Source: Aplysia californica
Taxonomy: Eukaryota
Length of the DNA stretch: 64,000 bases
Direction of reading: 5' to 3'
Assembly (NCBI RefSeq): GCF_000002075.1
Contig: NW_004797932.1
Coordinates: forward strand, 9,168 to 73,167
Below, piece after piece: positions 1,970 through 52,600 of this stretch (positions within the stretch are counted from its first letter, which is position 1; each line of letters starts with the position of its first letter). The notes beneath the pieces are model-generated. The model was given only the letters and a program-made list of their open reading frames with translations. It was not told the DNA's origin and searched no databases. The position numbers and the translations under genes were made by a program.

Positions 1970-1987
1970 ATGGCGCCGACAACTGAG
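1970..1987 (+). CDS. IFT52: IFT52 exon 1 (MAPTTE)
   Basis: gccaccATGG, followed by GAG|gtattc; phase 0 fits exon 2. Confidence 0.75.
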
Positions 1988-31600: not shown

Positions 31601-34600
31601 GGTCGTATAAGTGCCGAAGTTTTAGTTTTAGTAGCAGTTTTACGGCGCTCGCAACTGCATAAGGTCATATGAGCGCCAGAAGATTAGAGGTGTTACAAGA
31701 GAGTAACTAACACAAAAAGAAGGAGGGGAGATAAAGACGATAGATGTTAGATAGGACAGAAGAGGCAAACCATACCAGAACACCCGCCACCCACCCACAG
31801 ATAGGAGTTTGAATTTGAGGACACAGACGCACATGGACTCAATCGGGGTTATTAAGAGTAAGAAAAAAAAGCAAGACAGACAGACAGATAGAGACAGGAG
31901 GGAGGGGGGGGGTGTTGGCTCTAGAAAATACAAGTCTGACAACGCTGTCAAGGCTATTAGGTTGAGAAATGTTTTTCCGGTTATAGTTTTAGTAAGAGTT
32001 TTACTGCACTTGCAACACAATTAGGTCTTATAAGTGCCAAAGATTTGAGGTGTTCAAGAGAGTAACGTGCACAAAAAAGGAGAGATAAGGACAATGCATG
32101 TTTGATAGGAAAGAAGGGAGCAAATCACAGCAAAGCACCTGCTAACCACCCAAAAAGTGTTTCACTTTCTTGAAGGGCCCAAAAGAAGTAAAAACAAAGA
32201 CAACAGTTAGAGTGAAACAGATGAAAAAGCAGCAGACACCAGATGTTATTATAGTCCAAGTTAAAGCGTGGGGTGAGAACACAATAAACCAACAGGAGAA
32301 ATATCTCAGCACTGTGGTATCAAAGAACAACCTTCCACACCTAGTCAAACATATTTCATGGCACTCTCTGAGTGGGCTGAGAACACATTATACAACAAGA
32401 CAAGTTTCAAACTAGTCATCATCATCATTGCCTTTCTCACCCTGCACCAGGGTACAGGCCACGGAAAAACACCTTCCACCTTTCTCTATCCTGGGCTAGC
32501 CTCTTGATGTTATTCCATGTCTTCCCACTTTTCTGTACATCGATTTCTGTGATTTAAACTAGTGCAATCATAAAAAGTGCCAGTGTGGAGAGGCGGACCA
32601 AACTGTGGAACACATCCTTCAGCACTGCAGGACACACTCCAGACAGTCATGCAGAAGTATTCATACTATCAGAAATAACCAACTGAGCTTCGACCCTCTT
32701 TTCAGTCAGAAATATCATTTTCTCTCATAGTTCCTCATTCAAATAGTGCTTGTATTGTTGGTAATAACAAGCTGAACTTTGGTGAAAAGGTCAAACTTCA
32801 ACAGAAAAAAACTCTTCTTTAACACTTTGCCATCACAAGGCTTACATAGTAAAAATCCTTGCCATCAGAGGCGAAGGCATTTTGGGGAAAATCCAAACAA
32901 ACTGGGAGGTAAACATCGCCGATCGGCGAGATGTTTTTTTAAGTTTTAGTAGAGGGTTTTACATAAGGTCATATGAACGCCAGAAGATTAGAGACGTTAC
33001 TAGAGAGTAACAAACATAAAAAAGAAGAAGGGGAGATAAGGACGATAGATGTTTGATAGGAAAGAAGAAGCAAGATGTGACGGCAAAGTGTTAAAGAGAA
33101 AACAAAACTGGAAAAAACCATCCCTTCCCCGCAGACCTTGTCTCACAGCCGGGCTCCCCGTTGGGACAAGTGTACACCTGACCACACGACTTTTTGTAGT
33201 CCGACGCCTGCATGCTCTCCAGGGACTTCTTCTGGAAATCGTCGTAGAGAATGTCCAGGCCCGTCACCGCCTCCACTCGCTCTGTGGCGCAGCGCCGGTG
33301 GTCAGAGTTCGGGCCCGGCCCTTTGCTCAGGTAGCACTTCTCTGGGGAAAAGTAAAAAGTATCAACGGCAACAGCCATTATCTTACTATACTTAGTTTAG
33401 TTTTAGTAGGGGTTTTACAGCGCTCGCAACTGCATATGGTCATATGAGCACCACAAGATTAGACGTGTTACAAAAGAGTAACAAACAAAAAAAAGAAGAA
33501 GGGGAGATAAGGACGATATATTGTTATATGTTTGATAGGAAAGAAGAAGCAAAAGCAGTAGCAGAAGCAAACCACACCAGAACATCCGCCAACCACCCAA
33601 TATCTTATCATACCTAGAGAAGAAACAGAATACTGTGCACATAACTGATAAGTGTGTTTAACACACTGCAATGCTGTATGTCTTGATTTAGTAAGAGTTT
33701 TACGATACTTGCAACACAATAAGGTTATATAAAAGCTGAAGATTAGAGGTGTTACAAGAGAGTAACAAACACAAAAAAGAAGGGAGGGGAGATAGAGACG
33801 ATAGATTTTTTTATAGGAAAGAAGGAGCAAACCACACCAGAGCACCCGCCAACCACCCACAGTAGAAGTAAAAATATCAACGGGAACTGCCATTATCTTA
33901 CTACACCCACAGCAGAAACAGAATACTGTGCAATATTGTTGTTGTTATCGATCCAGTAATACTGTGCACATAACAGATAAGTGTGTCTAACACACTGCAA
34001 TGCTGTACATCTTAATTTAGTAAGAGTTTTATGATACTTGCAACACAATAAGGTCATGTAAGTGCAAAAGGTTAGAGCTGTTACAAGTAGAGAGTAACAC
34101 ACACAAAAAAGCAGGAGGAGAGATAAAGACGACAGATATTTGATAGAAAAGAAGGAACAAACCATACCAGCACACCCGTCAACCCCCCCGCACGGTACTT
34201 CCAACATATTTTGACTCACCCTGTAAAGCAAGGTTACAACATTTAACTTTCTACAGCAACATCAAATTTATTAAAAACCCAAAAATAAGTTCCAACCACA
34301 AACATGAATTATTAATGACAAGTTCACATTCCATGTCAATGAAACCGTGAAGCATGACATCCCTAATCTCCCATTCACTCAAGCAGCCCCGTCAGTATAC
34401 AGCGCACTCGGAAAAAGTCCACCAGACACCATAATCCAGGTCACGTCAGATTTTATCTCTATAGCTTCAACTCTTTAAGACCCGATCCCGATCCCACTCA
34501 TCTGACTGACAGCACACACAGCTGTGTGCACCACGGCAGCAGACGTCTGTTTTGTTTAAGTAATGGTTTTACAGCACTTGCATCACAATAAGGTCATATA

Positions 34601-37600
34601 AGTGCCGAAGATTAGAGGTGTTACAAGAGAGTAGCAAAAAAAAAATAGAAGGAGGAGAGATAAGAACAATTGATGTTTGATAGGAAAGAAGGAGCAAACC
34701 ACACCAGAGCACCCGCCAACCACCCACAGAGACGTTTGTAACATCAGAGCTTAATGGTGTATCAATTTGGGGGGGGGGGGGGGGTTTCCCTACTGAAAGT
34801 GAAACAGATCGGAGCTGTTACTACTAACAAAGATAAGCCATTTCTATACTCAACAGTCTCGCTGTAACTACATGTAACGTCAAAGTGAGTAAATATTTTC
34901 GGCATTTCTTGGTCTTATCATTCTATCTTTTTTCTTTCCAGATATGAAACAGAAGTTGACAAATCATGGTTCACCATGTACCTCTCTGCACTTTTCTACC
35001 CCACCATATGTCTGTCTCACTACGGAGAGTCACTGACATGTCTTTTAGAAAAATACTGTTTGACGTCAAAAGACTGTTGAGCCCGTTCACTTTTACGAAA
35101 AGATCATAGATAAAACCATGAAATTTGTATCCAGTTTCACCACTGGCATCAAGAGAAATGATTTCAAGCTTTCTGAAAGCCACGTCAGGTCATGTTATAC
35201 CGTTCTCAGAACCCACAGCCTCGAAGAGACAGAGAACTAATGGGCTAAAAACAGTATCCAGAAAGACAAAAAAAACCCAAAAAATTAATAAATAATCTTC
35301 ATCACCATGATTACAAACAGCATGTCATTTTTACTACTACTCACTGATATAGCAGTCGTCATCGACATCGCACTTGCAGCCTCCCATGAAGTTCCCTCTG
35401 GTGAAGTTCATACACTCTTCATCAGTCTTGGGGGTCATCCCTTCGAAGACGGCTTGAGAAATCGTGTTGATCTTGCCCACCCCCGCCGAGTCCATGTAGG
35501 GCGTGGACACAGAGGTCTTGTGAGGGGCCGAGCTCGTACGTTTGTACCACGGACGCCTGAAGTACGCGGGAATCAAACAAGGCGGCTAATTAATACTTTG
35601 TATATATATGCTGTCAGTATATCAAACATGGTAACTAATTAATACTTTGTATATATATGCTGTCAGTATATCAAACATGGTAACTAATTAATACTTTGTA
35701 TATATATGCTGTCAGTATATCAAACATGGTAACTAATTAACATTTTGTGTATATATGCTGTCAGTATATCAAACATGGTAACTAATTAACATTTTGTGTA
35801 TATATGCTGTCAGTATATAAAACATGGTAACTAATTAACACTTTGTATACTCTGTTAGTAAATCAAACAAGGTAAGTAATTAACACTTTGTTTATACTAT
35901 TAGTAAATCAAACATGGTAACTAATTAACACTTTGTAAACGTTATTAGTAAACCAAACAAGGTAACTAATTAACACTTTGTATATGCTATTAGTAAATCA
36001 AACATGGTAACTAATTAACACTTTGTAAACGTTATTAGTAAACCAAACAAGGTAACTAATTAACACTTTGAATACGCTATTAGTAAATCAAACATGGTAA
36101 CTAATTAATTAACACTTTGAATACGCTATTAGTAAATCAAACAAGGTAACTAATTAACACTTTGTGTACACTGTTAGTATATCAAACAATGTAAATCATT
36201 AACACTTTGTATACTCTGTTAGTATATCAAACAATTTAACTCATTAACACTTTGTATACGCTATCAGTATATCAAACAATGTAACTCATTAACACTTTGT
36301 ATACGCTATCAGTATATCAAACAATGTAACTCATTAACACTGTATACGCTATCAGTATATCAAACAATGTAACTCATTAACACTGTATACGCTATCAGTA
36401 TATCAAACAATGTAACTCATTAACACTGTATACGTTATCAGTATATCAAACAATGTAACTCATTAACACTGTATACGCTATCAGTATGTCAGTATCATTT
36501 GTCCAGCACACTAGTTGATCTGATTACGATCATGAGAGTGAATCACTCGCACTATTGAAGCGAAACTTTTCAAGAGAAGCTGCGTGCACTTCTAAAGAAG
36601 TTAACAATTTTGAAAATGCCATTATGTCAATCTATACTGTCTAAAGAAGTTTACAATTTTGAAAATACCATTATTTCAATCTACGCTCACATTGAAAAGA
36701 AGTTTACAATTTTGAAAATGCTATTATTTCAAAATTATGGCTATCATATCTTTGATGAAAGTATCTTTTTCAAAAGACTTAAAATGTATCTTTATAAGAA
36801 AAAAGATGTACTTTGTTGGGTCGTAGCCTCTGGTAGATCTGTGGCCAGGGTAGGTGCGAAATACTCCGCTCCGAAGCCCCACATTTGTCCACTTGACTTG
36901 ATCAATGGACTCAAACTTTCTGTCTCTCCAGATTTTCTCGATGGGCTGCGTGATCAAAACATCAGCTCTGAAAGCACAAAAAGAGCAATGAAAAAAAGTG
37001 CATGTAACAATAGAGAACTGCAATCTACAATTTTAAAAAGTATAAGGTAAAGGGAAGATGTAGAAGCAAGCCCATCATCAAAAGAATAATCAGAAAATGT
37101 GCTTACAGCAAAATAAGGTTTCCCTACTGAAAGTGAAACAGATCGGAGCTGTTACTACTAACAAAGATAAGCCATTTCTATACTCAACAGTCTCGCTGTA
37201 ACTACATGTAACGTCAAAGTGAGTAAATATTTTCGGCATTTCTTGGTCTTATCATTCTATCTTTTTTCTTTCCAGATATGAAACAGAAGTTGACAAATCA
37301 TGGTTCACCATGTACCTCTCTGCACTTTTCTACCCCACCATATGTCTGTCTCACTACGGAGAGTCACTGACATGTCTTTTAGAAAAATACTGTTTGACGT
37401 CAAAAGACTGTTGAGCCCGTTCACTTTTACGAAAAGATCATAGATAAAACCATGAAATTTGTATCCAGTTTCACCACTGGCATCAAGAGAAATGATTTCA
37501 AGCTTTCTGAAAGCCACGTCAGGTCATGTTATACCGTTCTCAGAACCCACAGCCTCGAAGAGACAGAGAACTAATGGGCTAAAAACAGTATCCAGAAAGA

Positions 37601-40600
37601 CAAAAAAACCCCAAAAAATTAATAAATAATCTTCATCACCATGATTACAAACAGCATGTCATTTTTACTACTACTCACTGATATAGCAGTCGTCATCGAC
37701 ATCGCACTTGCAGCCTCCCATGAAGTTCCCTCTGGTGAAGTTCATACACTCTTCATCAGTCTTGGGGGTCATCCCTTCGAAGACGGCTTGAGAAATCGTG
37801 TTGATCTTGCCCACCCCCGCCGAGTCCATGTAGGGCGTGGACACAGAGGTCTTGTGAGGGGCCGAGCTCGTACGTTTGTACCACGGACGCCTGAAGTACG
37901 CGGGAATCAAACAAGGCGGCTAATTAATACTTTGTATATATATGCTGTCAGTATATCAAACATGGTAACTAATTAATACTTTGTATATATATGCTGTCAG
38001 TATATCAAACATGGTAACTAATTAATACTTTGTATATATATGCTGTCAGTATATCAAACATGGTAACTAATTAACATTTTGTGTATATATGCTGTCAGTA
38101 TATCAAACATGGTAACTAATTAACATTTTGTGTATATATGCTGTCAGTATATCAAACATGGTAACTAATTAACATTTTGTGTATATATGCTGTCAGTATA
38201 TAAAACATGGTAACTAATTAACACTTTGTATACTCTGTTAGTAAATCAAACAAGGTAAGTAATTAACACTTTGTTTATACTATTAGTAAATCAAACATGG
38301 TAACTAATTAACACTTTGTAAACGTTATTAGTAAACCAAACAAGGTAACTAATTAACACTTTGAATACGCTATTAGTAAATCAAACATGGTAACTAATTA
38401 ATTAACACTTTGAATACGCTATTAGTAAATCAAACAAGGTAACTAATTAACACTTTGTGTACACTGTTAGTATATCAAACAATGTAAATCATTAACACTT
38501 TGTATACTCTGTTAGTATATCAAACAATTTAACTCATTAACACTTTGTATACGCTATCAGTATATCAAACAATGTAACTCATTAACACTTTGTATACGCT
38601 ATCAGTATATCAAACAATGTAACTCATTAACACTGTATACGCTATCAGTATATCAAACAATGTAACTCATTAACACTGTATACGCTATCAGTATATCAAA
38701 CAATGTAACTCATTAACACTGTATACGTTATCAGTATATCAAACAATGTAACTCATTAACACTGTATACGCTATCAGTATGTCAGTATCATTTGTCCAGC
38801 ACACTAGTTGATCTGATTACGATCATGAGAGTGAATCACTCGCACTATTGAAGCGAAACTTTTCAAGAGAAGCTGCGTGCACTTCTAAAGAAGTTAACAA
38901 TTTTGAAAATGCCATTATGTCAATCTATACTGTCTAAAGAAGTTTACAATTTTGAAAATACCATTATTTCAATCTACGCTCACATTGTAAAGAAGTTTAC
39001 AATTTTGAAAATGCTATTATTTCAAAATTATGGCTATCATATCTTTGATGAAAGTATCTTTTTCAAAAGACTTAAAATGTATCTTTATAAGAAAAAAGAT
39101 GTACTTTGTTGGGTCGTAGCCTCTGGTAGATCTGTGGCCAGGGTAGGTGCGAAATACTCCGCTCCGAAGCCCCACATTTGTCCACTTGACTTGATCAATG
39201 GACTCAAACTTTCTGTCTCTCCAGATTTTCTCGATGGGCTGCGTGATCAAAACATCAGCTCTGAAAGCACAAAAAGAGCAATGAAAAAAAGTGCATGTAA
39301 CAATAGAGAACTGCAATCTACAATTTTAAAAAGTATAAGGTAAAGGGAAGATGTAGAAGCAAGCCCATCATCAAAAGAATAATCAGAAAATGTGCTTACA
39401 GCAAAATAAGTTGCAGTAGGAGAAGGGGGGGGGGAGGTAGAGGGAGGGGGGGGGAGGTAGAGGGGGGGGAGGTAGAAGGGGGGGGAGGAGGGGGCTGTTT
39501 GCCTGTGCTTGATGTATCATCAGCAGCCTAGAATGGAAAAGGAAAATGAGACGTCACATGAACAAATAAATACTGGCAAGTAAAAAAAGTTTCTCTCGCA
39601 AACCACCAAAATAAATTCTCTGCAATAAATTCACTCAGCCCACAACACTTCTGTCTTACCTAACGCCTTTGTTAAACTTCTGATCTCGACTTTCACATCC
39701 TTGGTCTTCGCTGTATCCGTTGATCCAAAAGTGAGCATCCAAGGTCTTCTCTTCCAAGCTGTCGTTGTACATATACTTGATGGGATCACAGTGGCTCTGA
39801 GGGGCTGCAGGAAAGAAAAAAAAAATCATACTTATTATACTTTAGAAAATGTACCCCCTTACTATTCCAAAAGAAAAGGTAATTAATATATGTGTCACGA
39901 CGTGGTGGAATCAGGCACTCGTCAATTTTTGGGCATGTCGAGTTATTGGTATTATCTTAAAGCGTGTTCACTTACCTTGCTTTCTATGGAAAAAAAAATT
40001 CCCATCTATCTTGAATAGAAGTTGAGATATTGGCAATTGAAGGAAGTGCGTGTAGCCTGGTTTCAGAGGTAAAATTAGCGAGAATATGGCCGCCAAAGTT
40101 TGGTAACTTCAATAGCTTGAGAGTCCTTGAAAATGGAAACTATCTATATTTTGTGCCATTAATGTTTTTCAGTAAAATTTACTCAGAAATGTGTTTCTAT
40201 ATGGACATAAAAGATGTAGAGCCAAAAAACACAAATTCGAAAAAAACTGCCAAACTTTAGGAAAAATGCATGTTTCTTTGATTTCATTAATTTGATGACG
40301 AGTGCCTGATTTCACCATGATGCCTCACGTATAATCAAATCATCAGATAGATGTCCTTTTGTAAGAGAGAGGCAGAGAACAAGGATGGACGAAGATCTTG
40401 TCAGTACGTTAGTGCTCTAGCATGTGTAATCCACAGCTTGCTCTGTATACTTCTTAGGAAGACGAGAACGTATCCAAGTCGTGTCCTTGGGTCAGCTGGG
40501 GGAATGATAATTGTAGGGCACATAGAGCATGCTGTAGAGCATGAATACATTTGCTATAAAAATGTTATTATTATTATTATTACTATTATTATTATTATCA

Positions 40601-43600
40601 TTATTATTTGGCGCTCATATGAGCTTATGCAGTTGCGAGCACCGTAAAACCTCTACTAAAACTATCATCATTATTAATATTATCATTATTATTATCCGTG
40701 GTGTCCCAGCCGTCAATAACTATGAAATAAGTAGGAAGATATCAAACCCTGATATATACTTACCTAAGAAAATTGTGGAGTACTTGTAAGTAATTCTCAG
40801 TTCGGGATACCTCTCCTCGGACTCTCTCACGTCTATTTTCTCGTACACGCCCGGCAGTCTCTCCCTCAGAAGGGCGCTGTTGTACATCTTCAGGAGATTG
40901 TAGTAGCTCTCGTCTATGCTGGTGCGGTCTCGCGGCTCTTGAGATCGGCGAAATTCCTAAGAACGAAACAATGCACATGGGGGTTTGCGATATATTTTTG
41001 TCCCAGCTCACTGCTCAAAAAGACATAATAATAAAAATCAAGTTTATGGCATCTTCTAAACTCTTTTAAATGAAACGAAACGTCGCATTTATTTCATATT
41101 TTGCTCAATCTCACACCCAACCAGACGCAGTTTGAGTTCTTGGGATCTATGGTGTTTATTTAAACGAAACAAAACATGGGGTCTTATTTAAATGTTCGTT
41201 GTTGTCTCTGAACCAAGCCTTACACAAAAAATCAAGTTTTTGTCATCGGGACAGAATTCCTTAAAAGGAAACAGAACAAGTGACTTTCTTACTTTGTGGA
41301 AACTTGTCACCCTGCCTGACATCAATGTAAGGGGTCATTTTAACAATTTGCTGCCAAAAGTCTCATATATTAAAAACTTTTGCCATCAAAGGCAAAGGCA
41401 TTTTGGGAAAATCCAAAGAAATTGGGAGGTAAACATCGCCAATCCGCGAGATGAGGCGTCAAAGTGTTAAAAACAGAACACCTGACAGAAAGAAAGAAAT
41501 GTTCCCAGGAGGACAAGGAAACTAGGTAACCCAGCCAGACTCAAACTTTTCTGGAGTGAGCCACGACTTACCATATCCTCACTTGCCAAACTGAAGGCAA
41601 ACGAGTAGTCTTTGTCCAAGATGGACCCGTAGTAGTAGGTCTGAGGGAGCAGAATTGAAAAAAATAATGTTATTGTCGTAATTAGTGACAGAGCAAATCC
41701 TAGATCAGTTTTTGTACCCTCATATATCATCATGAATAGCATTTGTATAGTGCAAATTCCAGATCAACAGCAAGCTCTAAGTATTTTACAATCTATATCA
41801 TTCACGGCGCACAGAAGCAGGATACTTTAGTTGAGAACTCAGGTAGCTAGTGCCGCGCTGACCTTTGACGGTGAGCGGGGTCATTGTTTGGGCATTCTTC
41901 GGTCAGCATGACCGCGTGGGAGGTTTAGAAAATCGTATTTTTCATCCTGAATTGAGCGCTCATTAACGCTACAATATTGACTGAAAGACATCACTGCATG
42001 AGGGAATCAGAAGTTCCAAGCCTTTTTCATGATTTTTCACAAACAAAGTGAATCGGTATTCGTCGGTTTAGTTGTAACAGAAAGTGCAAGATGGTCATAC
42101 CTGATTCCCGTTAGCGTTTCCAGTTATGACGTAACGAGCGCCGATAATTAGAAAACTGAGCATCAGGATTAGTTCATCTTTGAGGGACATAAACGTAACA
42201 CTTAAGGGTATCTACTCCCCAAATTTCACTGCTGCCGCAGTTTCCGTAACCTCAAAATGGTTGACCTATGCATCACTTTGCCGTAAATATCCACACATTT
42301 CCCTCACTTAACTCCACACGAATTATTGAGTAGGCTATATAGGTTTTAGTTTAGTTTTAGTAGAGGTTTTACGGCACTCGCAACTGCTATAAGGTCATAT
42401 GAGCGCCAGAAGATTAGAGCTGTTACAAGAGAGTAACAAACATAAAAAAAGAAGGAGGGGAGATAAGGACGATAGATGTTTGATAGGAAAGAAGAAGCAA
42501 ACCACACCAGAGCACCCGCCAACCACCCTCTCTATAGGTTTTATTATTATATATATACACACATGTCTTGAATCATTGTCTCTGCACGTTGTACATCTAC
42601 GTGTTGGTCACTGACTGGGACAACAGGCTGAGGGTTGGTGTGGCAATTCTGACTTGTACTGTGTGTGGGTCTTTTTTGTGTTGAGTGTGCTGAGAGCACG
42701 GGTACATGTACTCTGTCTGTGTGGTTGTGTCTGTCTCAGAAATGTTGGTGCTAGGACTAGCTTGGTTTGTGTATGTTTCTTGATTGCTGTAGGGAGACTG
42801 GGGGTAACGTTGCTTTACTGTGGCACAGCCAAGAGAGAGCAGTTTTTTTTCTGTTCACAGACTGTGTATGTTTTCGCATCAAAGTCTTCAATGTAAGCAC
42901 ACCAAATGTTTGTAGGGGCACTGCACTATTTCGAAGTGTAGCGTCATAGATCGTTTTATAACATTTCAAACACATAAATTTGGAGTGTTTGTCACTACTG
43001 TCATCTTTGATATTCCACCCAAACACAAGGAAGAGATCACTGGCTATTTCCGAACATAAATAAGGTTTTTTAAAGGATTTTCTCTGCTTCCCTGTAATGT
43101 TCAGTCTTCCGTACACTCTAAACAAGACTGTTTAAAGCGGATACATGACTTTCAGGGGTGGGCTCCATTTTAAGGTCTTCGTTTTATACCCCAATAACGT
43201 TAGTAAATTCGCGGGCCCAACACAATAATCCGATGTAGCTTAACAACCACAACTGCGGTAGTACTGAAATTTCCACACTTAAAACAAGATTTGTTACTAC
43301 ACACGCACATACTAATCCCAAAAAATTTCAATGCACCGTTTTGTCGCAATAAATCATTATTTATCCTCTGTTTGAAATGAGAAAAGCGTGTTACACATGC
43401 AGCAAACAGACACGTGTGGAACACTTGGTATAAAACGTAGAAGACTGGGACTTTCTTTCAGAGAAGGAGAAATGGTGTTGGTTAAGTCTATAAATTAAAA
43501 CTACTTGGTGGGTCTAATGGAACCACGGCATGTGAGGTAGTAAATGAGACAATTTTATCGACAACACAGCATACGAGACTGTGGAGCATCACCTGTTCCA

Positions 43601-46600
43601 CTGCACAGCCCTAAATGACATCAGAGCTACACTTCTCCCTCCGAGACCTAACATTGACAACACACTCTATGGAACATTACAGCAACTGCAGCAGACCTGC
43701 ACTTATCACTACATGGCATTGGACAGAAAGGCGAGAGCCCAGCTGTTGCTGGATCGATAACAACAACAACAACAATCGAGAACACATCCCAGTTTATAAC
43801 GGTGCGATGAGGTCAAATGACCCCAATAAAAAAGGACAACGGGTACCGGGCGGGGTGATTAATTACCTCCGGACAGCGGGAGCTGCGGTGCAACTAAAAG
43901 GCGCGATTTCAGCTGATTTCGTGCGCCGTGTATTACCCCGACAAACCTGACAGCATTTTGAAATAATCTCTGGGAAGCATACAGTGAATATCACATAGAT
44001 TTCACAAAGGGTAGTCAACCACAGTATTTTAGGTTTACTTTCGGGGGGCGGGGGGGGGGGGTAGTCTAGAGTTAGGTCAGGCTCGCTCCAGGAGTAACGA
44101 ACGGTTCGCTGGTACAACTTGCAAACGAACTGACGGGTAACAAAGGAACCAAACTGATGCTCCAGTCGAGATCTTTTTCCTGTGTGGAAAAGGTCACCTT
44201 CAGACTCAACTGTCAAGTACATTTCATTGGCATTGGTAACATTATTAGATCACAAAGACGTTTTGGCACTTACCCTGGTCTTTCCATCTCTTGCTTTGTT
44301 CAAAATTTTCATCCCCGTTTCCCCATGAAGCATTTCCTCTTCAATCTCAGAAAACTCACTCGGGTTGCCATCTTTGTCTTGCTCTAGCCCAGAGATGGGG
44401 ATGTAGATCGGATCTTCCAGCAACTGCACAAGTAAGAACAGAAAAGATAAGAAGATAACTCATAGTTCAAAGTGAAATTTCCAACTTCCGCTTAATTATT
44501 TGCTCTTTATCCTTTTAGAATGAACGAAAAGAAACAAAAAGCAAATACCAGCATGAGCGGTGATATGGTCAGTCTCTTCGCCATTTCTTTCAAATACTGT
44601 GAGCTCTATTCTGACATGAGCAGTCCATCTCATTGAGAACATCTTTCCATCTGTTAGGACGCTGTATCCTCCCAGGGCTGGGATAGCCCTTACAAGCACA
44701 TATGAGAAGCCACCCACCCCCTAAATGACCTGAATTGTTTCGATACGAGTGTAAAACATAACAACAATTTACAAAAATAGTAAAACAACATTAATGTCAC
44801 TGGCACTCTCATCAAATTTAGAGCTACTGTGAACATATTTTAGAAAGACAATACCCTGAAGAAAACCACGTGGAATATAACTTTGAGCACTGCTACACAT
44901 TTTTTAAAAAGCAACAAATTTACTCAAATTAAAACTGCGTATGCCGATTCCATACAATCCCTAAAAAAAAAGAAGTAACGGACTCAGTAACAGACATCAT
45001 ACCGTTGTGCTTGGCTTCAGCTTCGGGTGGAAAATCACGTCTGCATTGGAATTGATCAAGAAGGAATAAACTGACCCCCACTGATGCTTGGTGAGAAAGT
45101 TTTCAATTTCGTCCAAGGTTGCATCGATGCCAACCACACCAATGTATCTGAAAAGACAAAAAATAAAAAGAAGAAACAAAATGTAGAGACCAGTAGGCTA
45201 TAGGGTGCTATGTCCTCAAATTCCCTACTCTCCAGTCTAGTAACTGGGCAAAGTGCTCACTATGAAATATCACTGTGACAAACCTGGAAGGAAAACCACT
45301 ACTTGTGTACTGGTGTGCCTTCAACTTCATTTAATAATTTAATAATTGCATTTATATAGCGCATATCCACGCTCAAGAGCATGCTCTATGCGCTTTACAA
45401 CCATTATTACCCCAGCAGACCCTCTGAAACCAGGGTCATCCGTTTGAAACCCCTCCCCCACAACAAATCGAGATTAAGAACACTTCACTACTGACCGAAA
45501 CCAGGGTCATCTGCACCACACCCAAAATGAAACTAAATAAGCTAGTGGTGAGCTCTCATTTGCATAACTTCATCAAAGCAGGAAAAGGATCTGCTCAGCA
45601 GGTGCTCTGGTGTGGTTTGCTCCTTTTTCCCTCTCAAACATCTATCATCCTTTTCTCTCCTCCTTCTTTCTTGTGTTTGCTACTCTCTTGCAACACCTCT
45701 AATCTTCGGCACTTGTATGACCTTACTGTGTTGCAAGTGCCGTAAAACTCTTACTCAAACTAAAACTCCTCTCTCTCTCTCTCACAGGTGCTACTTGTTT
45801 GACACAGCAGCGTTTCTAGTGAAACGATTACTTACTAAAACGTACTAAAGCAAGACACACAGCGTTTCTAGTGAAACGATTACTTACTAAAACGTACTAA
45901 AGCAAGACACACAGCGTTTCTAGAGAAACAATTACTTACTAAAACGTACTAAAGCAAGACACACAGCGTTTCTAGAGAAACAATTACTTACTAAAACGTA
46001 CTAAAGCAAGACACACAGCGTTTCTAGAGAAACAATTACTTACTAAAACATACTAAAGCAAGACACACAGCGTTTCTAGAGAAACAATTACTTACTAAAA
46101 CGTACTAAAGCAAGACACACAGCGTTTCTAGTGTAATGATATGGGACATAATCCATAATCCACCACAGTTGCTTGTCCATTATATTATCAGTTGTTTCCC
46201 TTTCATTGTAAACACTCCATGAGCAGTTCTCACATTATCTTGAGATTCAGGGCTTCTGGGAACGTAGGGTCTGGGGTGTATATAAAGCTGTGTCTGTGTC
46301 TCTAGTGTTTTTTTCGGTCATTTGACTGGTGAAGTGAACCTTGCACCACTAGTGAAACAATTACTTACTAAAACATACTAAAAGCAAAGCACAAGTCGAG
46401 CAACCACTCACTTGCCAGTTTTGGCACTGGTCACAGGGACAGCGTGGGTGATCATCAGACCCAGCCCCCATGAGTCCAGGTACGGCGCGGTCCACAGCGC
46501 GTTCTCCGTGGCGGCGATGGCCGACAGGAACTCGAAGTAGTTGTACATCTGCGTGATGAGGTTCTCCCCCGTCAGAAGCTTCAGCATGCTGCCGTTGTGG

Positions 46601-49600
46601 TCACAGGCCAGGGTACCGGGGAACATCTCCGCGTCCTCCACAATGAGGTAGCTGAAGATCCTTGCCTGTCCAACAATGAATTCTACTGCTACACTTCTCA
46701 TAGGAACATATCAACATAAACAAAAATGGGCCAAAGTAAAGTGTGACCCCCTCACATGTTTTTGCACATCACAACAATCAACGATCACAACGCACTGTTT
46801 CACATTACTGAAAGAGGTGATTACAATCCCGCAGTAGGTCAAGTAAATCAGGGGTGGGGAGCGGAGGGGGGGTACTTAATTTTTACCCAAAAAAACAAAT
46901 ATCTATGCCTTTTGCAATGAGAAACTTGATGAATTGATAGAACTTCCCATGTGAGTATTTACTAAAAGAACAAAAATCTACAAACTTTACAATGACAGCA
47001 ATGAGGTACTAGAATAATAAGGCTCGAGAAACAGGGAGAATAAATGCATTCAAAACGTCACAAACAGACAACACAATCTCCTTAGCCTCCCACTCAAAAG
47101 TTGACATCAAAGCCCTTTTAAAAACATTACAATAACTTCTGAAAACCTCCATCTTTTTCATCTTTTTCAACATGGCACTGGGTCAAAAGCACACTCTCAA
47201 AGCCTACTAGATAACAACAATAACAAAAATATTAGAAGCCCTTCAAAGTAAAAAAAAAAACAACAACAAGAGGATGTTGCTTTTTCGAAACCTAAAAAGC
47301 AAAACAACCCCCCCCCCCCAAAAAAAAAAAAAAAACGGAGAAAAAAAACAAACAACCAAATGAAAAACCAAAGAACATAAAAAGAAAAAGACAGACTTAC
47401 ATTTGGAGCGAGATACTTGTTCTTTTCCATCGGCACGTTGTACACAGATGTAAAGTTGTACTTGCAGATGGGCCCAGGAACGTACCCACTCCTTGTGTAG
47501 TACCCTGGAGCGGGATCAGAACAGGACAGCAGTAGGGTCATTGTCATGACTATAAAACACCTCTTTGGGCAAGCATACGAAGATTCCAAATTCAGCCATT
47601 ATTAGACAGTAGGGTCATTGTCAGGGCTATAAACACCTCTTTGGGCAAGCATACGAAGATTCCAAATTTAGTCATTATTAGGCAGACTCACATCTGCATC
47701 AACATTGCATCCATAATAATAGATAGCATTTGTATAGCGCAAATCCCCGCTCAACAGCAAGCTCCATGCGCTTAACAATCTATACTATTACACCAGCAGA
47801 CCTGAGAGCATTCTGAAACCTCATCTTCCTGGGAAGCATACAGTGCAAGCAGCCATTTATAGGCGCTAAATCACTACAATACTGACAAGATCTTTCGCTG
47901 TCTATGGCCGAGTACCCATTCCCACCTGGGGGAAGAGAGGAAAATTCATTTAAAGTGCCTTCCCCAAGGACATGTCGGGCCCGCGGCTCGAACCCCCAAA
48001 ACGCAACCTCACGATTACGAATCCGGTAGCCTAACCACTAGGCCACCGACACCACGTTTCAGCACAATTTCATCAAGAGATAAGAAAATGAAGAATTCAA
48101 CACACCTGGTCCACACCTGACATCCTCCCCGTCGGTATCTTTCCCGTCTGTGGCAAACACAATGATGGACTGGCAGCCAGTGCGAGGTGCTCTCCTCAGT
48201 AGGTCAAAGGCTAGGTCGTAGCCTTTTCTGGGAAAAAGAGAATGAACACATAACATTACCTTGCTTTAATCCTTGTAAGAAAAGATTTCATAATCCAAGA
48301 ATCCCAGAGGTGGGTGGTTGGCAGGTGCTCTGGTGTGGTTTGCTTCTTCTTTCCTATCAAACATCTGTCGTCCTTATCTCCCCATCCTTCTATTTTATGT
48401 TTGTTACTCTCTAGTAACACCTCTAATCTTCGGCACTTATATGACCTTATTGTGTTGCAAGTGCCATAAAACACTTCCTAAAACAAAACTAAAAGAATTC
48501 CAGAGCATTCTGTATGATGCACTCCAGTGTGCAGGATAAAGTAATCTCACACTAGCTAATAGATGCCAGTGAGCAAAAAAGTTTATAGTCATAGGATATA
48601 TGGCAAGTGGGTATATATGGCAAGTGGGTACCAACAGAGATTTTTTTAAATTCTTATGATCTAATCAATTAACTGTAATGTTTTAGTAATACAATCTTTC
48701 CCCCAACACTTAGGTAATATAACTTCAAAATCTAACCATTATGAAACATGACATGGCTTATTTGCTTCAAGGGTTCAACTTCTTAATAGAGAAACAAATA
48801 CAAAAAATACAACCAAAAAAAGCTACCTTTTAAGTCAGTTACACATAAACAAATTGTTTCTAATCCCTATTAATCTTGTCCTCATCTTCTTTCACCAACA
48901 ACATAAGCAGAATAATAAATACAAAAATACAAAATATACTTTTTCAATCCTCATCCATTTGAAATAAAGCAGGTAACAAAAAAACACCAGGAATTTCTTT
49001 TCAAAGGGAAAATTGCAATGCAAAGGCCATCAGTGTAAAAGAGAAAAGAGAACCAAAACACTTAAGAATTCGACAAATTTAGCAGGATCTACTCACTCCA
49101 GTTCCGTTGTTCCCCCAGCTACCAATTTTTCAATTTTCTCTATCAAGTCCTTTCTGTGAGCATTTGTAGCTTTCACCATTCTCTCCTCCTGGCAACTCAA
49201 AACTCTTGTGTCGTAGTAGTGCCACCTGAAGAGAGAGAAATCAACGAGTTCATCAATACGCTCTGGTTTAAAAGAGTCACATCAGACCCACAGTCTCATT
49301 CCTTTGACACTAGTTCATCAATACGCTCTGGTTTAAAAGAGTCACATCAGACCCACAGTCTCATTCCTTTGACACTAGTTCATCAATACGCTCTGGTTTA
49401 AAAGAGTCACATCAGACCCACAGTCTCATTCCTTTGACACTAGTTCATCAATACGCTCTGGTTTAAAAGAGTCACATCAGACCCACAGTCTCATTCCTTT
49501 GACACTAGTTCATCAATACGCTCTGGTTTAAAAAGAGTCACATCAGACCCACAGTCTCATTTCTTGGATTCCCTACTCCCATGTGTTCAAAGAAAAACTT

Positions 49601-52600
49601 GCACATTTCATTGGTTCCAACATGCTCTGGTTCAAAGGAGAAAGCAGACACACAATCTCATCAGTTTGATTCCCCACTCGGTAGAGTTGGGTCGCAAGCG
49701 CGAGAATGGAACTGAATCGCCACTCTTCCCTGCGGAACGCCATTCGCGATTCACTTCAGCGGAACGCGGAACAGTATCGCCTTCAGATTCCCGATTCCCT
49801 CCCCTGTCGCTGTCACCACCTTGTGGCTTGTTTGTAACCCACTGCTGGGTCACGAGTCGAGTCACGAGCACAAGAACGGAACGAAACAATTAGTATGGCT
49901 CCCCTNNNNNNNNNNNNNNNNNNNNNNNNNNNNNNNNNNNNNNNNNNNNNNNNNNNNNNNNNNNNNNNNNNNNNNNNNNNNNNNNNNNNNNNNNNNNNNN
50001 NNNNNNNNNNNNNNNNNNNNNNNNNNNNNNNNNNNNNNNNNNNNNNNNNNNNNNNNNNNNNNNNNNNNNNNNNNNNNNNNNNNNNNNNNNNNNNNNNNNN
50101 NNNNNNNNNNNNNNNNNNNNNNNNNNNNNNNNNNNNNNNNNNNNNNNNNNNNNNNNNNNNNNNNNNNNNNNNNNNNNNNNNNNNNNNNNNNNNNNNNNNN
50201 NNNNNNNNNNNNNNNNNNNNNNNNNNNNNNNNNNNNNNNNNNNNNNNNNNNNNNNNNNNNNNNNNNNNNNNNACTATAATCCAAGAAAAATCACACAAAA
50301 TGAGGGAGAAAACATTCAACAATACCATATTTACATCAAGTTAGGTTTGCAAGTAGACTTCCCACAATTTACTTGTCCACATTTACCAGTGAAAGGAGAT
50401 GGCAGTTGAACATAAAAATGTGCAAGTTGTTCCCCACAGTGACATCACATTAATGATGGATCTGACACAGGTGGATTTTCATTTCAGGATGCTTCTGATT
50501 AAAATCATCAAAATCTTTGATGAGACCTCGAATGCACTTTACAATATAACAGAGTGATTTACATTACAGGAATATCAGGGTCAAGCAATAAAATAAATGA
50601 AAAGTTTGTTTTAACATCCAATGGGTCCTTAATACAGCAGTGGTATGAACTGAAGTTGTGCCCTGAGCATTGACAGGGCTCGGCCCATATTATACAGCAG
50701 TGGTATGAACTGAAGTTATACAGCAGTGGTATGAACTGAAGTTATACAGCAGTGGTATGAACTGAAGTTATACAGCAGTGGTATGAACTGAAGTTGTGCC
50801 CTGAGCATTGACAGGGCTCGGCCCATACCTTTTCAACAAGTAATTTAAAAAGACACATTTTTCACAATACCTTCATATTCAAAAGAAGGGAAACAAACCA
50901 AATTTGCTAGTTTTCCATTCACATTCACGGGTTATTGAGAATCAAGGAAAGGCTTTTTATACAATAAAATATAAAGTTACTGCCAGCAGCTTTATCCAAT
51001 AAAACAAAGTTACTGCCAACAGCTTTATCCAATAAAACAAAGTTACTGCCAACAGCTTCTATAAAGAGCATTGCTTTTACAAACAAGCGAGCTATAAAAG
51101 CTTTTTTCTGTAAACATGATTTTCATTCAAACTGTGTTTATCCCTGATTAAAAAAAAAAATCCTCCATTCCATGAATGAATCATGTGCATTGACTTGTAC
51201 ACGCTAAACTCGGTTACAAAAGCAATCATCATTGATCATTATGTGACACCATTCTGCTAAGTGATAACCTATATATAATGGACAGACAATTAACAAGACG
51301 TACTTTCCCATTAGCCTCTCTGGTCTACAAAACAACAATCATTTGCCGGCAGTAGCTATAAAATGGCAAATAAACCAGGGAAATGTTCATGACAAATAAA
51401 CAGGACCATGAACTATGTGTGAAAAAAAATTGTCATGTGGCTTTGTAAAAATACAGACACATATTTATTTTTAGATGACATGTAGCCTACTAAAGCAAAT
51501 AACTAACATGGAGCAACTTTACCTAGAGTAAAAGCACCAGGATGATTGCGTAATACTACCAAAAAACTACATCCTGAAACTTGCTCTCTTTGAAGTAAGG
51601 CAACAAGTCAATAAATCTGACCAATAGACATTTCAGTCTTACTTTCCCACTTCATTCCAATGGCTGTTCCTGGCACAGATCACGTTGACATAATCCTGCT
51701 TCGTCAACGTGTTGATGACTGTCTTGGCCACGGCTTTCGCTATGGAAAACTTCTCACCTTTCATAGACAGACTGTACAAGACAAATTCAGAAAGTAAATG
51801 CAATTTTACAGACGTGTATATATATGCATGATATTGGTTCTGTCTACAAAATGACAGAACATTGCCTTTCACTGCGTCAAAATTGACGCAAGTTTGACGC
51901 AAGTTAAAGTTATGTTTAACTCTTTATCTCCTGCAAGCCGCTCCCAGCGGCTCGCGGTCAGATACTCTGTGCCTGTGAGCCGCTGACAGCGGCTAGGGCA
52001 GATTCTTTTACAACTACTTCGACATCAAAATGCTTTCCAGCAATTGCCAAAAACAGGTCTCTTTCACCGAAAGTTCATTCATTTGATGAACTATCTATAT
52101 AGGTTCACTTGTTTTTATTTAAATGACCCATTTGGTGACGATTTTGTCATTTTTAGATTTAGTACCAAAGAAAGGGCCCGGCACAGTGGGTTCACCCCTC
52201 CCCCCCTCCCCACAGAGGTAAAGAGTTAAATATTATCAATGTCAATGTATTCAAAATGATTCAGTAATGGAATTGCAAATTGGCAATTGATACAGAAAGT
52301 AAGCCAAAAAATACCACACATCTGGCATGCCTCAGTGATTAAGCAGTGATATAAGCTCTTGGAGTCAGAGTAACAGTTTTTTTACCACTCCATTTTCACA
52401 TTGATTCCTGTATTAGCACCAGCATTATAACTGGGGCCTACATCAGACTGAGTGACAGACCTGCCACATCGAGAAATCTTATCATACAGAATCTCAATTC
52501 GATCTATCTTTGCACACCTGGGCAGATTGTTTAAACAGATCTCCAAAAAGTTAACAGGTTTCCAGCCTCAGCAACGTAGTCATGACAGCAGTGTTGTATG

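What the first reader, a model, noticed from the sequence alone, without database searches (positions are those of the whole stretch)
41803..43930. RAG1-N-like (Chapaev/N-RAG-TP-type) DNA transposon relic with defined CAC ends inside an intron
Seen: a 2128-bp segment bounded by perfect 10-bp inverted termini CACGGCGCAC...GTGCGCCGTG and a 4-bp TSD (catt/tatt). The boundaries are confirmed independently, because the two flanks rejoin into the SINE seen intact at ~47730-47845. On the minus strand (43168-42850) a frameshifted ORF reads H..AL.SL[F]RV[Y]G...VFG.NI.DD....H...FMC..CY...W.......VC. Established: this pattern matches the zinc-binding region of the RAG1 N-terminus (LCRICG...D...HP..FC..C...WxPH...CxxC), which is shared by Chapaev transposases and the molluscan N-RAG-TP elements. 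CAC termini with 4-bp TSDs are typical of Chapaev. Inference: this is a deleted, non-autonomous member relevant to how the RAG1 N-terminus arose. No DDE core is visible.
Basis: partly seen in the sequence, partly recalled or inferred. Interest (0 to 1): 0.8.

Follow-up and report, generated by a model that had tools for sequence, protein, structure and literature searches.

The report
Broken Chapaev (RAG1-like) transposon copy
This is a dead, internally deleted copy of an already described sea-slug "cut-and-paste" jumping gene (Chapaev / N-RAG-TP type) whose full-length relatives encode an enzyme built like the antibody-gene recombinase RAG1. The copy is ordinary, but the family's two ends carry a conserved short-spacer/long-spacer signal pair that resembles the 12/23 signals RAG1 uses.

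Summary
Window 41803-43930 is a 2128-bp element with perfect 10-bp CACGGCGCAC inverted termini. It sits in a SINE-like repeat whose flanks rejoin exactly. Thirteen other complete copies in this genome all have perfect 4-bp target-site duplications; this copy's is catt/tatt.

[quoted passage not shown] A profile of 19 intact paralogs hits only RAG1 in the PDB (NZD entry 21wb, E 2e-4; 3e-6 with a 48-protein profile).

The window copy lacks the transposase core. A 4350-bp parent on contig C550 and an intact 941-aa sister family carry it. The predicted core superposes on mouse RAG1 458-1008 (Z 28.2, 460 residues).

The kind is already described (Chapaev/Chapaev3, N-RAG-TP; Chapa domain). This scan had already noted the same kind on other DNA of this genome.

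One extra result may be new. In seven families from at least four assemblies, each element has one end with CAC-heptamer + 15-16 nt + TTTAGTT and one with 24-27 nt. The long-spacer end is on the transposase gene's 5' side in the six families with a coding region. Genome-wide counts are 458 and 376 against about 14 in controls. I found no paper describing this for Chapaev.

The parts
41799..41802 (.). Left copy of the 4-bp target-site duplication (catt). The intact repeat has tatt here.
41803..41832 (+). Short-spacer end, on the transposase gene's 3' side. It holds the terminal CACGGCGCAC (heptamer CACGGCG at 41803-41809), a 16-nt spacer, and TTTAGTT at 41826-41832.
41833..42348 (-). Non-coding 3' part of the element. 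With the end above it corresponds to positions 1-553 of the 4350-bp copy on C550.
42349..42529 (.). Nested insertion 1. It is a ~180-bp short interspersed repeat, absent from the other copies. The first look found more than 2700 candidate copies; the 40 scored are 93-99% alike. Its TSD is ~11 bp.
42530..42564 (-). Junction of the internal deletion. About 2.6 kb holding the whole transposase core (positions 554-3159 of the C550 copy) is missing here.
42565..42851 (-). Remnant of the Ser/Thr/Pro-rich linker that follows the zinc-finger domain. It is frameshifted.
42850..43216 (-). Decayed Chapa domain (RAG1 NZD-like double zinc finger). It has 3 internal frameshifts, and the first CxxC is now FxxY.
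43217..43568 (-). Region upstream of the Chapa domain (5' leader). It is open in frame in better copies.
43569..43774 (+). Nested insertion 2. It is a 206-bp repeat ending in (CAA)n, absent from the other copies. The first look found more than 1700 candidate copies; those scored are 95-98% alike. Its TSD is ~11 bp.
43775..43891 (-). 5' subterminal region of the element.
43892..43930 (-). Long-spacer end, on the transposase gene's 5' side. Reading inward, it holds CACGGCG, a 25-nt spacer, and TTTAGTT (AACTAAA at 43892-43898). The terminal decamer is at 43921-43930.
43931..43934 (.). Right copy of the target-site duplication (tatt).

Best explanation
Window 41803-43930 is a dead, non-autonomous copy of a Chapaev-type cut-and-paste DNA transposon. 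This is the kind first reported from Aplysia as N-RAG-TP.

Shown:
- A short (~1.74 kb) internal-deletion derivative inserted into a SINE-like repeat and made a 4-bp target-site duplication.
- The copy later took two short retroposon insertions and decayed. It is now 8-9% diverged from its nearest sisters and has at least 4 frameshifts.
- It keeps both transposon ends and the N-terminal Chapa zinc-finger coding region, but has lost the whole catalytic core.
- Full-length relatives encode about 940 aa. [quoted passage not shown]
- The predicted core structure superposes on RAG1 458-1008. It keeps D, D, C(2)C, H(4)H and E at RAG1-like spacings.

Inferred:
- Copies like this one were moved in trans by that transposase, which recognised bipartite ends: a CAC heptamer plus a TTTAGTT motif.
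- The two ends of every element differ by about one helical turn in spacer length. This suggests that a synapse needs one end of each type.
- The copy is now immobile in practice, because no intact transposase of its own family was found.
- It probably lies in an intron of an alpha2delta-like calcium-channel subunit gene, in the same orientation as that gene, and is not detectably transcribed.
For: Ends, TSDs and the empty site.

Copy families and shared deletion breakpoints (short form = C550 copy 1-~560 + 3160-4350; medium form = 1-553 + 2827-4350).

The parent copy C550:356622-360971 has Chapa plus a DUF1280 core. It is collinear with the intact 941-aa ORF L062:2813-5635, with 51-55% identity in the core.

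Chapa domain matches RAG1 NZD:
- Pfam PF12560 in 14 of 19 members (best 2e-5) and zf-AD in 16 of 19.
- The profile against all PDB sequences gives only RAG1 (21wb, E 2e-4).
- The 48-protein profile gives 21wb at 3e-6, full-length RAG1 at 4.5e-4 covering both fingers, and a ZAD at 0.061.
- The AF2 model has pLDDT 84.6 and its best folds are ZADs, as published for the NZD.

Core:
- AF2 pLDDT 94.3.
- The top 49 Foldseek hits are all RAG1, BbRAGL or HzTransib.
- VIA-align gives Z 28.2, rmsd 3.6 A, 460 residues, RAG1 458-1008. The next unrelated fold scores Z 10.9.
- D125 and C215/C218 are invariant; D196, H504/H509 and E526/E530 are nearly invariant (90% or more).
- 103 homologs carry PF06918. Some also carry PF12560 or RING fingers.

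Ends.

No expression. Host gene.

Literature: PMC4411706, bioRxiv 10.64898/2026.01.24.700457, PMC8355894, PMC12730594.
Against: - I could not compare with Repbase Chapaev/Chapaev3 references or with the published N-RAG-TP sequence. The family name therefore rests on domain content, termini and TSDs.
- The window peptide by itself has no significant database hit.
- This copy's TSD has one mismatch.
- No intact autonomous copy of its own family was seen. The best are C550a and C550b, each with a stop or frameshift.
- Mobilisation in trans and the role of the two spacer classes are inferences. Nothing was assayed.
- The intron assignment rests on five collinear but individually weak domain hits, with no RNA support.
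Confidence: 0.92

Rival explanations
1. The element is a Transib or RAG-like (RAGL) transposon rather than a Chapaev.
For: The core of full-length relatives superposes on RAG1, BbRAGL and HzTransib with Z 24-28. The termini begin with CAC. The ends are bipartite and asymmetric, as in some Transibs and RAGL-A (PMC8355894, PMC10462144).
Against: TSDs are 4 bp in every readable copy, not the 5 bp of Transib and RAGL (PMC8355894, PMC4411706). No RAG2-like gene lies in the 4.1-4.6-kb elements. Sequence profiles do not reach the RAG1 core at all. Transib transposases are reported to lack an NZD-like domain (bioRxiv 10.64898/2026.01.24.700457), and these proteins have one.
Confidence: 0.04
2. The resemblance of the remnant ORF to the RAG1 N-terminus is a generic or convergent cysteine-rich (ZAD-like) pattern, not homology.
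For: The window peptide alone hits only zf-AD, at E 0.09. Fold searches give only weak ZAD matches, with Foldseek E 0.5 and Z 3.9. The Pfam RAG1_imp_bd hits are below the gathering score.
Against: Among 177,635 PDB sequences, the profile's only matches at E up to 10 are RAG1 (21wb at 2e-4, full-length RAG1 at 0.17). The broader profile gives 3e-6, and for full-length RAG1 the alignment spans both zinc fingers, including W..C..C. The domain sits N-terminal to a RAG1-like core, as in RAG1. A ZAD-like first finger is exactly what the NZD structure paper reports.
Confidence: 0.05
3. The unequal spacing of the two ends is a by-product and not a rule of synapsis. For example, the extra ~10 bp at the gene-5' end could belong to a promoter or leader element, or simply be inherited.
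For: The long-spacer end is on the gene's 5' side in all six families with a coding region. In families A and B the extra length looks like a duplicated ~10-nt unit. Many transposons have unequal ends for other reasons.
Against: Spacer sequences cannot be aligned between families, yet the two lengths are kept down to ~39% protein identity and in other genomes. Intermediate spacings are at background genome-wide. I counted 42-43 convergent short/long pairs and no homotypic pair in the listed parts. The only short/short variants seen are two neighbouring copies on C3.
Confidence: 0.35
4. The relic has been co-opted by the host, as an exon or a regulatory element of the surrounding gene.
For: It lies in the sense orientation inside what is probably an intron of an alpha2delta-like gene.
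Against: Depth is ~0 on its unique parts in three polyA RNA runs. There are at least 4 frameshifts and two nested insertions. Its divergence from sister copies is what neutral decay would give.
Confidence: 0.02

Closest known systems
Chapaev / Chapaev3 DNA transposons (Repbase; Kapitonov & Jurka 2007-2008; Kapitonov & Koonin 2015, PMC4411706; CMC/CMCT clade, PMC12730594)
   Same: N-terminal Chapa zinc-finger domain. [quoted passage not shown] CAC...GTG termini. Short TSDs. Aplysia californica is listed among the Chapaev-bearing species. Some homologs add a RING finger after the Chapa domain, as described for two Chapaev subgroups.
   Different: TSDs are 4 bp without a consensus. Anolis Chapaev3 has 3-bp TWA (PMC3014272). 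I found no description of two spacer classes at the ends of Chapaev elements in the held papers.
N-RAG-TP of Aplysia californica (Panchin & Moroz 2008, as cited in PMC8355894 and PMC8374863)
   Same: A sea-slug mobile element that encodes a protein like the RAG1 N-terminal region. The window copy keeps exactly that part and nothing else.
   Different: [quoted passage not shown] Here the N-terminal-only elements are internal-deletion derivatives of ~4.1-4.4-kb elements whose protein also has a RAG1-like core.
[quoted passage not shown]
   Same: Ligand pattern H..H, CxxC, C, H, CxxC, W, CxxC. It is the best and only significant PDB sequence match. The first finger is ZAD-like.
   Different: The Chapa domain lacks the long insertion between the first CxxC and the next ligand. 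The paper assigns that insertion to the vertebrate helix H2 (alignment gaps).
Transib (HzTransib, 6pqx) and RAG-like transposases (BbRAGL, 6b40); RAG1 core (4wwx, 6oep)
   Same: Whole-core fold from the dimerisation/DNA-binding domain to the C-terminal domain (Z 24-28). Same catalytic and zinc-ligand spacing.
   Different: No detectable sequence similarity in the core by profile search. TSDs are 4 bp, not 5 bp. No RAG2-like partner gene.
12/23 recombination signal sequences, and the asymmetric TIRs of some Transib and RAGL-A elements (PMC8355894, PMC10462144)
   Same: A conserved CAC heptamer. A conserved A/T-rich second motif. Spacers conserved in length but not in sequence. Two lengths that differ by 9-11 bp. 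One of each type per element.
   Different: The motif is TTTAGTT, not ACAAAAACC. The spacers measured to it are 15-16 and 24-27 nt. Nothing functional has been tested. The protein has K-T-(G/R)-G-Q-P where RAG1 has the GRPR motif of its nonamer-binding domain; this comparison is from memory and untested.

Membership tests
Chapaev (CMC/CMCT clade) | N-terminal Chapa domain (complex zinc finger related to the RAG1 N-terminus) | tested here: met
   A decayed remnant lies in the window. The domain is intact in family copies. RAG1 NZD is the only significant PDB match for the profile. PF12560 matches 14 of 19 members.
Chapaev (CMC/CMCT clade) | [quoted passage not shown] | tested here: met
   Met in the parent and sister families. 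D125 and C215/C218 are invariant; D196, H504/H509 and E526/E530 are nearly invariant. The residues are present in the C550 copy. They are deleted from the window copy, which is therefore non-autonomous.
Chapaev (CMC/CMCT clade) | Termini 5'-CAC...GTG-3' | tested here: met
Chapaev (CMC/CMCT clade) | Short target-site duplication (2-5 bp in the clade) | tested here: met
   4 bp. It is perfect in 13 of 13 other family copies. It is also perfect in 3 of 4 copies of family B, 1 of 1 of family C, and in families F, G and H. The window copy has 3 of 4.
Chapaev (CMC/CMCT clade) | Transposase clusters with Repbase Chapaev/Chapaev3 reference proteins | not testable with these tools
   No Repbase sequences are held. 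The only named homologs are 'hypothetical', 'uncharacterized', or clearly mis-assigned names ('amine oxidase', 'Reverse transcriptase').
N-RAG-TP (Panchin & Moroz 2008) | Aplysia californica element that encodes a RAG1 N-terminal-like protein | tested here: inconclusive
   The domain content is met. The organism is inferred only from the assembly size and contig number matching my memory of AplCal3.0, and from sea-slug best hits. The paper and its sequences are not held.
Transib / RAGL | 5-bp TSD | tested here: not met
   4 bp throughout.
Transib / RAGL | RAG1-like core fold | tested here: met
   Z 28.2 to RAG1, 24.5 to HzTransib and 23.8 to BbRAGL. The fold is shared, but membership is not claimed.
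RSS-like (12/23-type) bipartite asymmetric ends | Conserved heptamer plus a second conserved motif, two spacer-length classes about one helical turn apart, and one of each per element | tested here: met
   Seven families. Genome-wide counts are 458 at N15-16 and 376 at N24-25, against 20 at N19-20, with controls of 12, 16 and 25. I counted 42-43 heterotypic and 0 homotypic convergent pairs in the listed rows.
RSS-like (12/23-type) bipartite asymmetric ends | Cleavage or transposition requires one end of each class | not testable with these tools
   This needs an assay.

The most novel reading that the evidence does not exclude
This Chapaev lineage has a RAG1-NZD-like domain and a RAG1-like core but no RAG2 partner. 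It uses bipartite ends under a heterotypic short/long spacer rule that is homologous to, or an early parallel of, the 12/23 rule. The ends are CAC heptamer + 15-16 nt or 24-27 nt + TTTAGTT. They may be read by the conserved K-T-(G/R)-G-Q-P motif, which sits where RAG1 has its nonamer-binding domain. If so, the NZD, the core and the asymmetric signals were together before the Chapaev/Transib/RAG split. The 'separate N-RAG-TP donor' scenario would then be unnecessary.
Probability: 0.3. Interest if true: 0.7.

Novelty: already known. Interest (0 to 1): 0.4.

Why it matters
The copy itself adds nothing new. Chapaev elements with a RAG1-like N-terminal domain have been known in Aplysia since 2007-2008, and the Chapa/NZD link has just been analysed structurally.

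Two by-products matter for the debate on the origin of RAG.

First, the elements that carry only the N-terminal domain are deletion derivatives of elements whose protein also has a full RAG1-like core (Z 28). This favours one ancestral NZD-plus-core protein over a fusion of two transposons.

Second, a strict short/long spacer pairing of the ends is conserved across families and genomes in a lineage outside Transib and RAGL. The origin of 12/23 asymmetry is an open argument (the 'Transib seed' against RAGL-A TIRs). The natural, apparently intact elements on C880 and in other assemblies would allow a direct test.

Tried and rejected
- Pfam on the window ORF alone gave no RAG1 hit, only zf-AD at E 0.09.
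- phmmer of the 941-aa relative against PDB sequences gave nothing. Only profiles reach RAG1.
- The word-based homolog search with the N-terminal 130 residues found 2 proteins. This reflects a limit of that tool and is not evidence of absence.
I then fetched only short stretches.
- Foldseek and VIA-align on the Chapa model gave only weak ZAD matches. The NZD structure 21wb is in the sequence file but not in the fold libraries, so no direct superposition was possible.
- The Panchin & Moroz paper is not held.
- Cross-species ends could not be defined in several cases. L091-L093 (TARA and marine metagenome contigs) showed no boundaries. L097 gave no TIR/TSD pair. P0052 is not on record.
- The ORFs beside the element (44253-44459 and 40723-40956, minus strand) gave no alpha2delta match. 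The ORF 31239-31577 gave none by phmmer, but gave a weak VGCC_alpha2 Pfam hit.
- RNA showed no reads on unique parts of the element. The only depth comes from the two high-copy nested repeats, where most reads run on unlike sequence, so they come from other copies.
- The big representative-protein search, the complex predictor and the protein atlas were not used, because the family was settled without them.
- I considered and rejected chance inverted repeats, a Transib/RAGL identity, and host co-option (see the rival explanations).

Full report
**Setting.**
- The window is contig C662:9168-73167 of a 927,310,431-bp genome in 4332 contigs.
- Size and contig number match my memory of the Aplysia californica assembly AplCal3.0.
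- The best named relatives of the proteins below are sea-slug proteins.
- The organism was not otherwise tested.

**Observation.**
- CACGGCGCAC lies at 41803-41812 and its reverse complement at 43921-43930.
- A 10-bp inverted pair alone would not be convincing, because one search lists several chance pairs of that length nearby. Three other results fix the boundaries to the base.
- First, a search of the genome with the 2128 bp finds dozens of copies. Their matches are split as 1-546, 728-1766 and 1973-2128. So positions 547-727 and 1767-1972 (window 42349-42529 and 43569-43774) are later insertions in this copy.
- Second, 13 other copies with both ends in hand carry the same termini, allowing single point changes. 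Each is flanked by a perfect 4-bp duplication of a different sequence: cact, atgg, gtaa, tgtt, caaa, catt, agag, attt, gatt, acac, cctt, gcac, cagt.
- Third, with the element and one TSD copy removed, the joined flanks align without a gap across the junction to window 47723-47845 (81% over 123 bp, E 2e-27). They also align more weakly to 45344-45421.
- The window copy's own TSD is catt/tatt.

**The coding remnant.**
The H..H part is at 43216-43106. The main piece is at 43125-42907, with CxxC changed to FxxY. 'NIWCAY...VCEQKK' is at 42910-42850. The Ser/Thr-rich linker runs down to 42565.
- Alone, it hits nothing significant in Pfam (zf-AD, E 0.09).
- A protein search of the genome finds about 150 places with this domain. 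They range from 99% down to about 30% identity, and some lie inside open frames of 800-941 aa.
- A better copy of the same family (L017) reads ...LCRVCRR...LCSE...KHSKFVCLKCY...IWCAY...VCEQKR.
- I aligned 19 such domains from the genome (alignment A1).
- Pfam RAG1_imp_bd matches 14 of the 19 (best E 2e-5) and zf-AD matches 16 of the 19.
- A profile of A1 searched against all 177,635 distinct PDB sequences returns only RAG1. The N-terminal zinc-finger domain entry 21wb scores E 2e-4, and full-length RAG1 residues 99-194 score E 0.17.
- A broader profile from 48 proteins of many sources (A2) gives 21wb at 3e-6 and full-length RAG1 at 4.5e-4. The full-length alignment runs through the second finger (W...C..C). 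A Drosophila ZAD scores 0.061.
- The AlphaFold model of the domain (pLDDT 84.6) finds only ZAD domains as best folds, and weakly: Foldseek E 0.5, and Z 3.9-2.7 for the top five of 48,161 chains.
- This agrees with the preprint that solved the NZD. It reports a ZAD-like first finger and NZD-like 'Chapa' domains in Chapaev transposases, including one from Aplysia (bioRxiv 10.64898/2026.01.24.700457).

**The parent.**
- On contig C550 the same family has a 4350-bp copy at 356622-360971 (loci L009 and L061). It has the same ends, a gcac TSD, and 85% identity to the window copy over the shared parts.
- The window copy equals positions 1-553 plus 3160-4350 of it, so about 2.6 kb is missing.
- The missing part encodes the transposase core. 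The C550 copy carries two overlapping frames of 366 and 601 aa (one frameshift, and one stop in the Chapa domain).
- These frames are collinear with an intact 941-aa ORF of a sister family (L062:2813-5635), with 51-55% identity in the core.
- A second long but broken copy lies next to it (C550a, L017).
- The short form (1.69-1.76 kb; window, C61, C117, C368, C68, C421, C40, C6) and a medium form (2.07-2.12 kb; C44, C162, C13, C198, C289) each share their own deletion breakpoints. Both occur at unrelated sites with different TSDs. So they spread as non-autonomous elements. Mobilisation in trans is an inference.
- The window copy is 88-92% identical to its nearest sisters, and both nested insertions are younger than it.

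**The core.**
- Pfam sees only DUF1280 (PF06918, E 5e-13).
- A search with residues 440-930 finds 103 proteins. Nearly all carry PF06918, a few carry PF12560, and two carry RING fingers. This fits the published statement that some Chapaev subgroups have a RING after the Chapa domain (PMC4411706).
- In the alignment of 48 (A2), D125, C215 and C218 are invariant, and D196, H504, H509, E526 and E530 are nearly invariant (90% or more). Numbering is from residue 360 of the 941-aa protein. This is the D, D, C(2)C, H(4)H, E pattern that defines the CMC/Transib/RAG1 group (PMC12730594).
- The AlphaFold model of the 582-aa core has pLDDT 94.3.
- Its 49 Foldseek matches with E of 0.001 or better are all RAG1, amphioxus RAGL or HzTransib (best 1.6e-14).
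- VIA-align gives Z 28.2, rmsd 3.6 A and 460 aligned residues, with model 10-576 on mouse RAG1 458-1008. HzTransib scores Z 24.5 and BbRAGL 23.8. The next fold is the P element transposase at 10.9.
- Sequence profiles do not reach the RAG1 core.
- The sister family has at least three ~4.1-kb copies at 99% identity (C379, C880, C1039). Two of them have open frames of 940-941 aa, and there are dozens of deletion derivatives.
- The true termini of this family are CACAGCGCCG..., with 4-bp TSDs in 3 of 4 copies read. The C379 copy has lost its terminal bases.

**Classification.**
- The features are the Chapa domain, a DDE core with C(2)C and H(4)H, CAC...GTG ends and short TSDs. Together they are the features given for Chapaev in the papers I could read (PMC4411706, PMC12730594, PMC3014272).
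- Aplysia californica is among the species in the published Chapaev tree. N-RAG-TP from the same animal is cited as the element with a RAG1 N-terminal-like protein (PMC8355894, PMC8374863).
- I could not compare with Repbase or with the N-RAG-TP sequences. The original paper is not held.
- The element is not a Transib or RAGL member. The TSDs are 4 bp, not 5 bp, and there is no RAG2-like gene.
- PMC8355894 describes N-RAG-TP as made only of the N-terminal-like sequence and as a separate donor to RAG1. Here such elements are deletion derivatives of elements that also encode a RAG1-like core.

**The ends.**
- An earlier follow-up in this scan (s1-691460) noted unequal ends on another copy. I tested this here.
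- In the window family both ends share the terminal decamer and a TTTAGTT motif. TTAGTT starts at position 25 from the end on the gene's 3' side and at position 34 on the gene's 5' side, in all 13 copies.
- The sister family B has positions 24 and 34.
- A third family C (L059, TSD ttct) has 24 and 33.
- The spacers of the three families cannot be aligned with each other.
- Genome-wide, CACRGCG-N(10-36)-TTTAGTT occurs 1058 times, against 261 for the reversed control. N(15-16) occurs 458 times against 12. N(24-25) occurs 376 times against 16. N(19-20) occurs 20 times against 25.
- In the rows listed for contigs C1-C81, I counted 42-43 convergent pairs 0.27-4.9 kb apart. Every pair has one short and one long end, and none is homotypic. 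Most belong to a fourth, abundant ~1.56-kb family D.
- Chapa hits place the long end on the gene's 5' side in every family C copy I checked.
- Three intact elements from other assemblies were fetched through their proteins. L094 is 4174 bp with TSD cgct, inserted in a satellite with a clean empty site, and only 65-71% similar to this genome. L096 is 4181 bp with TSD agat and heptamer CACGGTA. L098 is 4595 bp with TSD tcgg and heptamer CACTGCT.
- These three have TTAGTT at 24/34, 25/36 and 24/34, again with the long end on the gene's 5' side.
- So the two spacer lengths and the motif are kept while heptamers and spacers change, down to about 39% protein identity. That argues for selection on spacing.
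- The held literature describes 12/23-like asymmetry for some Transibs and for RAGL-A (PMC8355894, PMC10462144). I found nothing on Chapaev: only one held paper contains both 'Chapaev' and 'heptamer'. Repbase Reports are not held.
- About 70 residues before the RAG1-like core starts, the proteins have a highly conserved K-T-(G/R)-G-Q-P...P-R-K motif. From memory, RAG1 has the GGRPR motif of its nonamer-binding domain at a comparable distance. This is a lead and has not been tested.

**Context.**
- On the minus strand, weak but collinear hits suggest an alpha2delta-type calcium-channel subunit gene spanning at least 31-53 kb:
  - VWA_N at about 52.9 kb (E 3.7e-5);
  - PDC/Cache at 46.4-46.7 kb (E 0.011) and 45.0-45.2 kb (E 0.049, with PDB alpha2delta-1 residues 485-530 as the top twelve hits at E about 0.1);
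  - PDC at 35.3-35.6 kb (E 0.009);
  - VGCC_alpha2 at 31.2-31.6 kb (E 0.0094).
- The element lies between these exons, in the same orientation as the gene. An intron location is therefore likely but not shown.
- Three polyA RNA runs give essentially no depth on the unique parts of the element or on its unique flanks. The only depth is on the high-copy nested repeats, from reads that mostly continue into unlike sequence.

**Verdict.** The copy is an old, broken passenger. The conserved short/long architecture of the ends, and the fact that 'N-terminal-only' elements are deletion products of RAG1-like transposons, are the parts worth a specialist's look.

Noticed in passing
window 31239-31577, 35340-35585, 45000-45197, 46411-46710, 52583-53050 (all minus strand): Collinear weak hits to VGCC_alpha2, PDC/Cache and VWA_N suggest a multi-exon alpha2delta-like calcium-channel subunit gene on the minus strand. 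The transposon relic lies between its exons.
   Followed up: partly
window 9165-9668 (+): An ORF holding an exon with a clear IFT52 GIFT-domain match (E 7.7e-21). A second gene, on the plus strand, therefore lies at the left of the window.
   Followed up: no
window ~34570-39520: A tandem duplication of about 2.33 kb. Minus-strand ORFs at 34974-35189, 35340-35585 and 36727-37032 recur with the same first 70 residues at 37308-37523, 37674-37919 and 39020-39325. The repeated unit includes the PDC-like putative exon. It may be a real exon duplication or an assembly artefact.
   Followed up: no
window ~49890-50270: A run of N (assembly gap or masked). It was left as it is.
   Followed up: no
G000:C880:260267-264370, C1039:200684-204790, C379 (L062:2104-6206): A sister Chapaev family with about 4.1-kb copies 99% alike and open frames of 940-941 aa. 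The C880 copy has both termini and an attc TSD. The C379 copy has lost 8 bp at one terminus and 1 bp at the other. The family looks recently active and has dozens of 1.9-kb deletion derivatives.
   Followed up: partly
G000:C3:342615-342643 and C3:345818-345846: Two neighbouring copies of the window family have lost one ~10-nt unit of the long-spacer end, turning it into a short-type end. They are the only such variants seen. They lie 3.2 kb apart on the same strand, as expected if short/short elements do not move.
   Followed up: no
G000:C7:1588895-1589166: A 272-bp mini-element made of just the long and short ends of the window family.
   Followed up: no
window 42349-42529, 53646-53827, 43569-43774: Two very abundant, young short repeats (copies mostly 95-99% alike; more than 2700 and more than 1700 first-look candidates). 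Sequences of the first are plentiful in polyA RNA on both strands. Many reads continue into poly(A) or unrelated sequence.
   Followed up: partly
window 47723-47845, 45344-45421, and 41735-41802 + 43935-43990: An older SINE-like repeat family. One member is the target into which the transposon inserted.
   Followed up: partly
L094:1-2375 and 6550-8835 (ENA ERZ24894579): In another organism's assembly, an intact 4174-bp relative sits inside a ~500-bp tandem satellite. This gives a clean empty-site control.
   Followed up: partly
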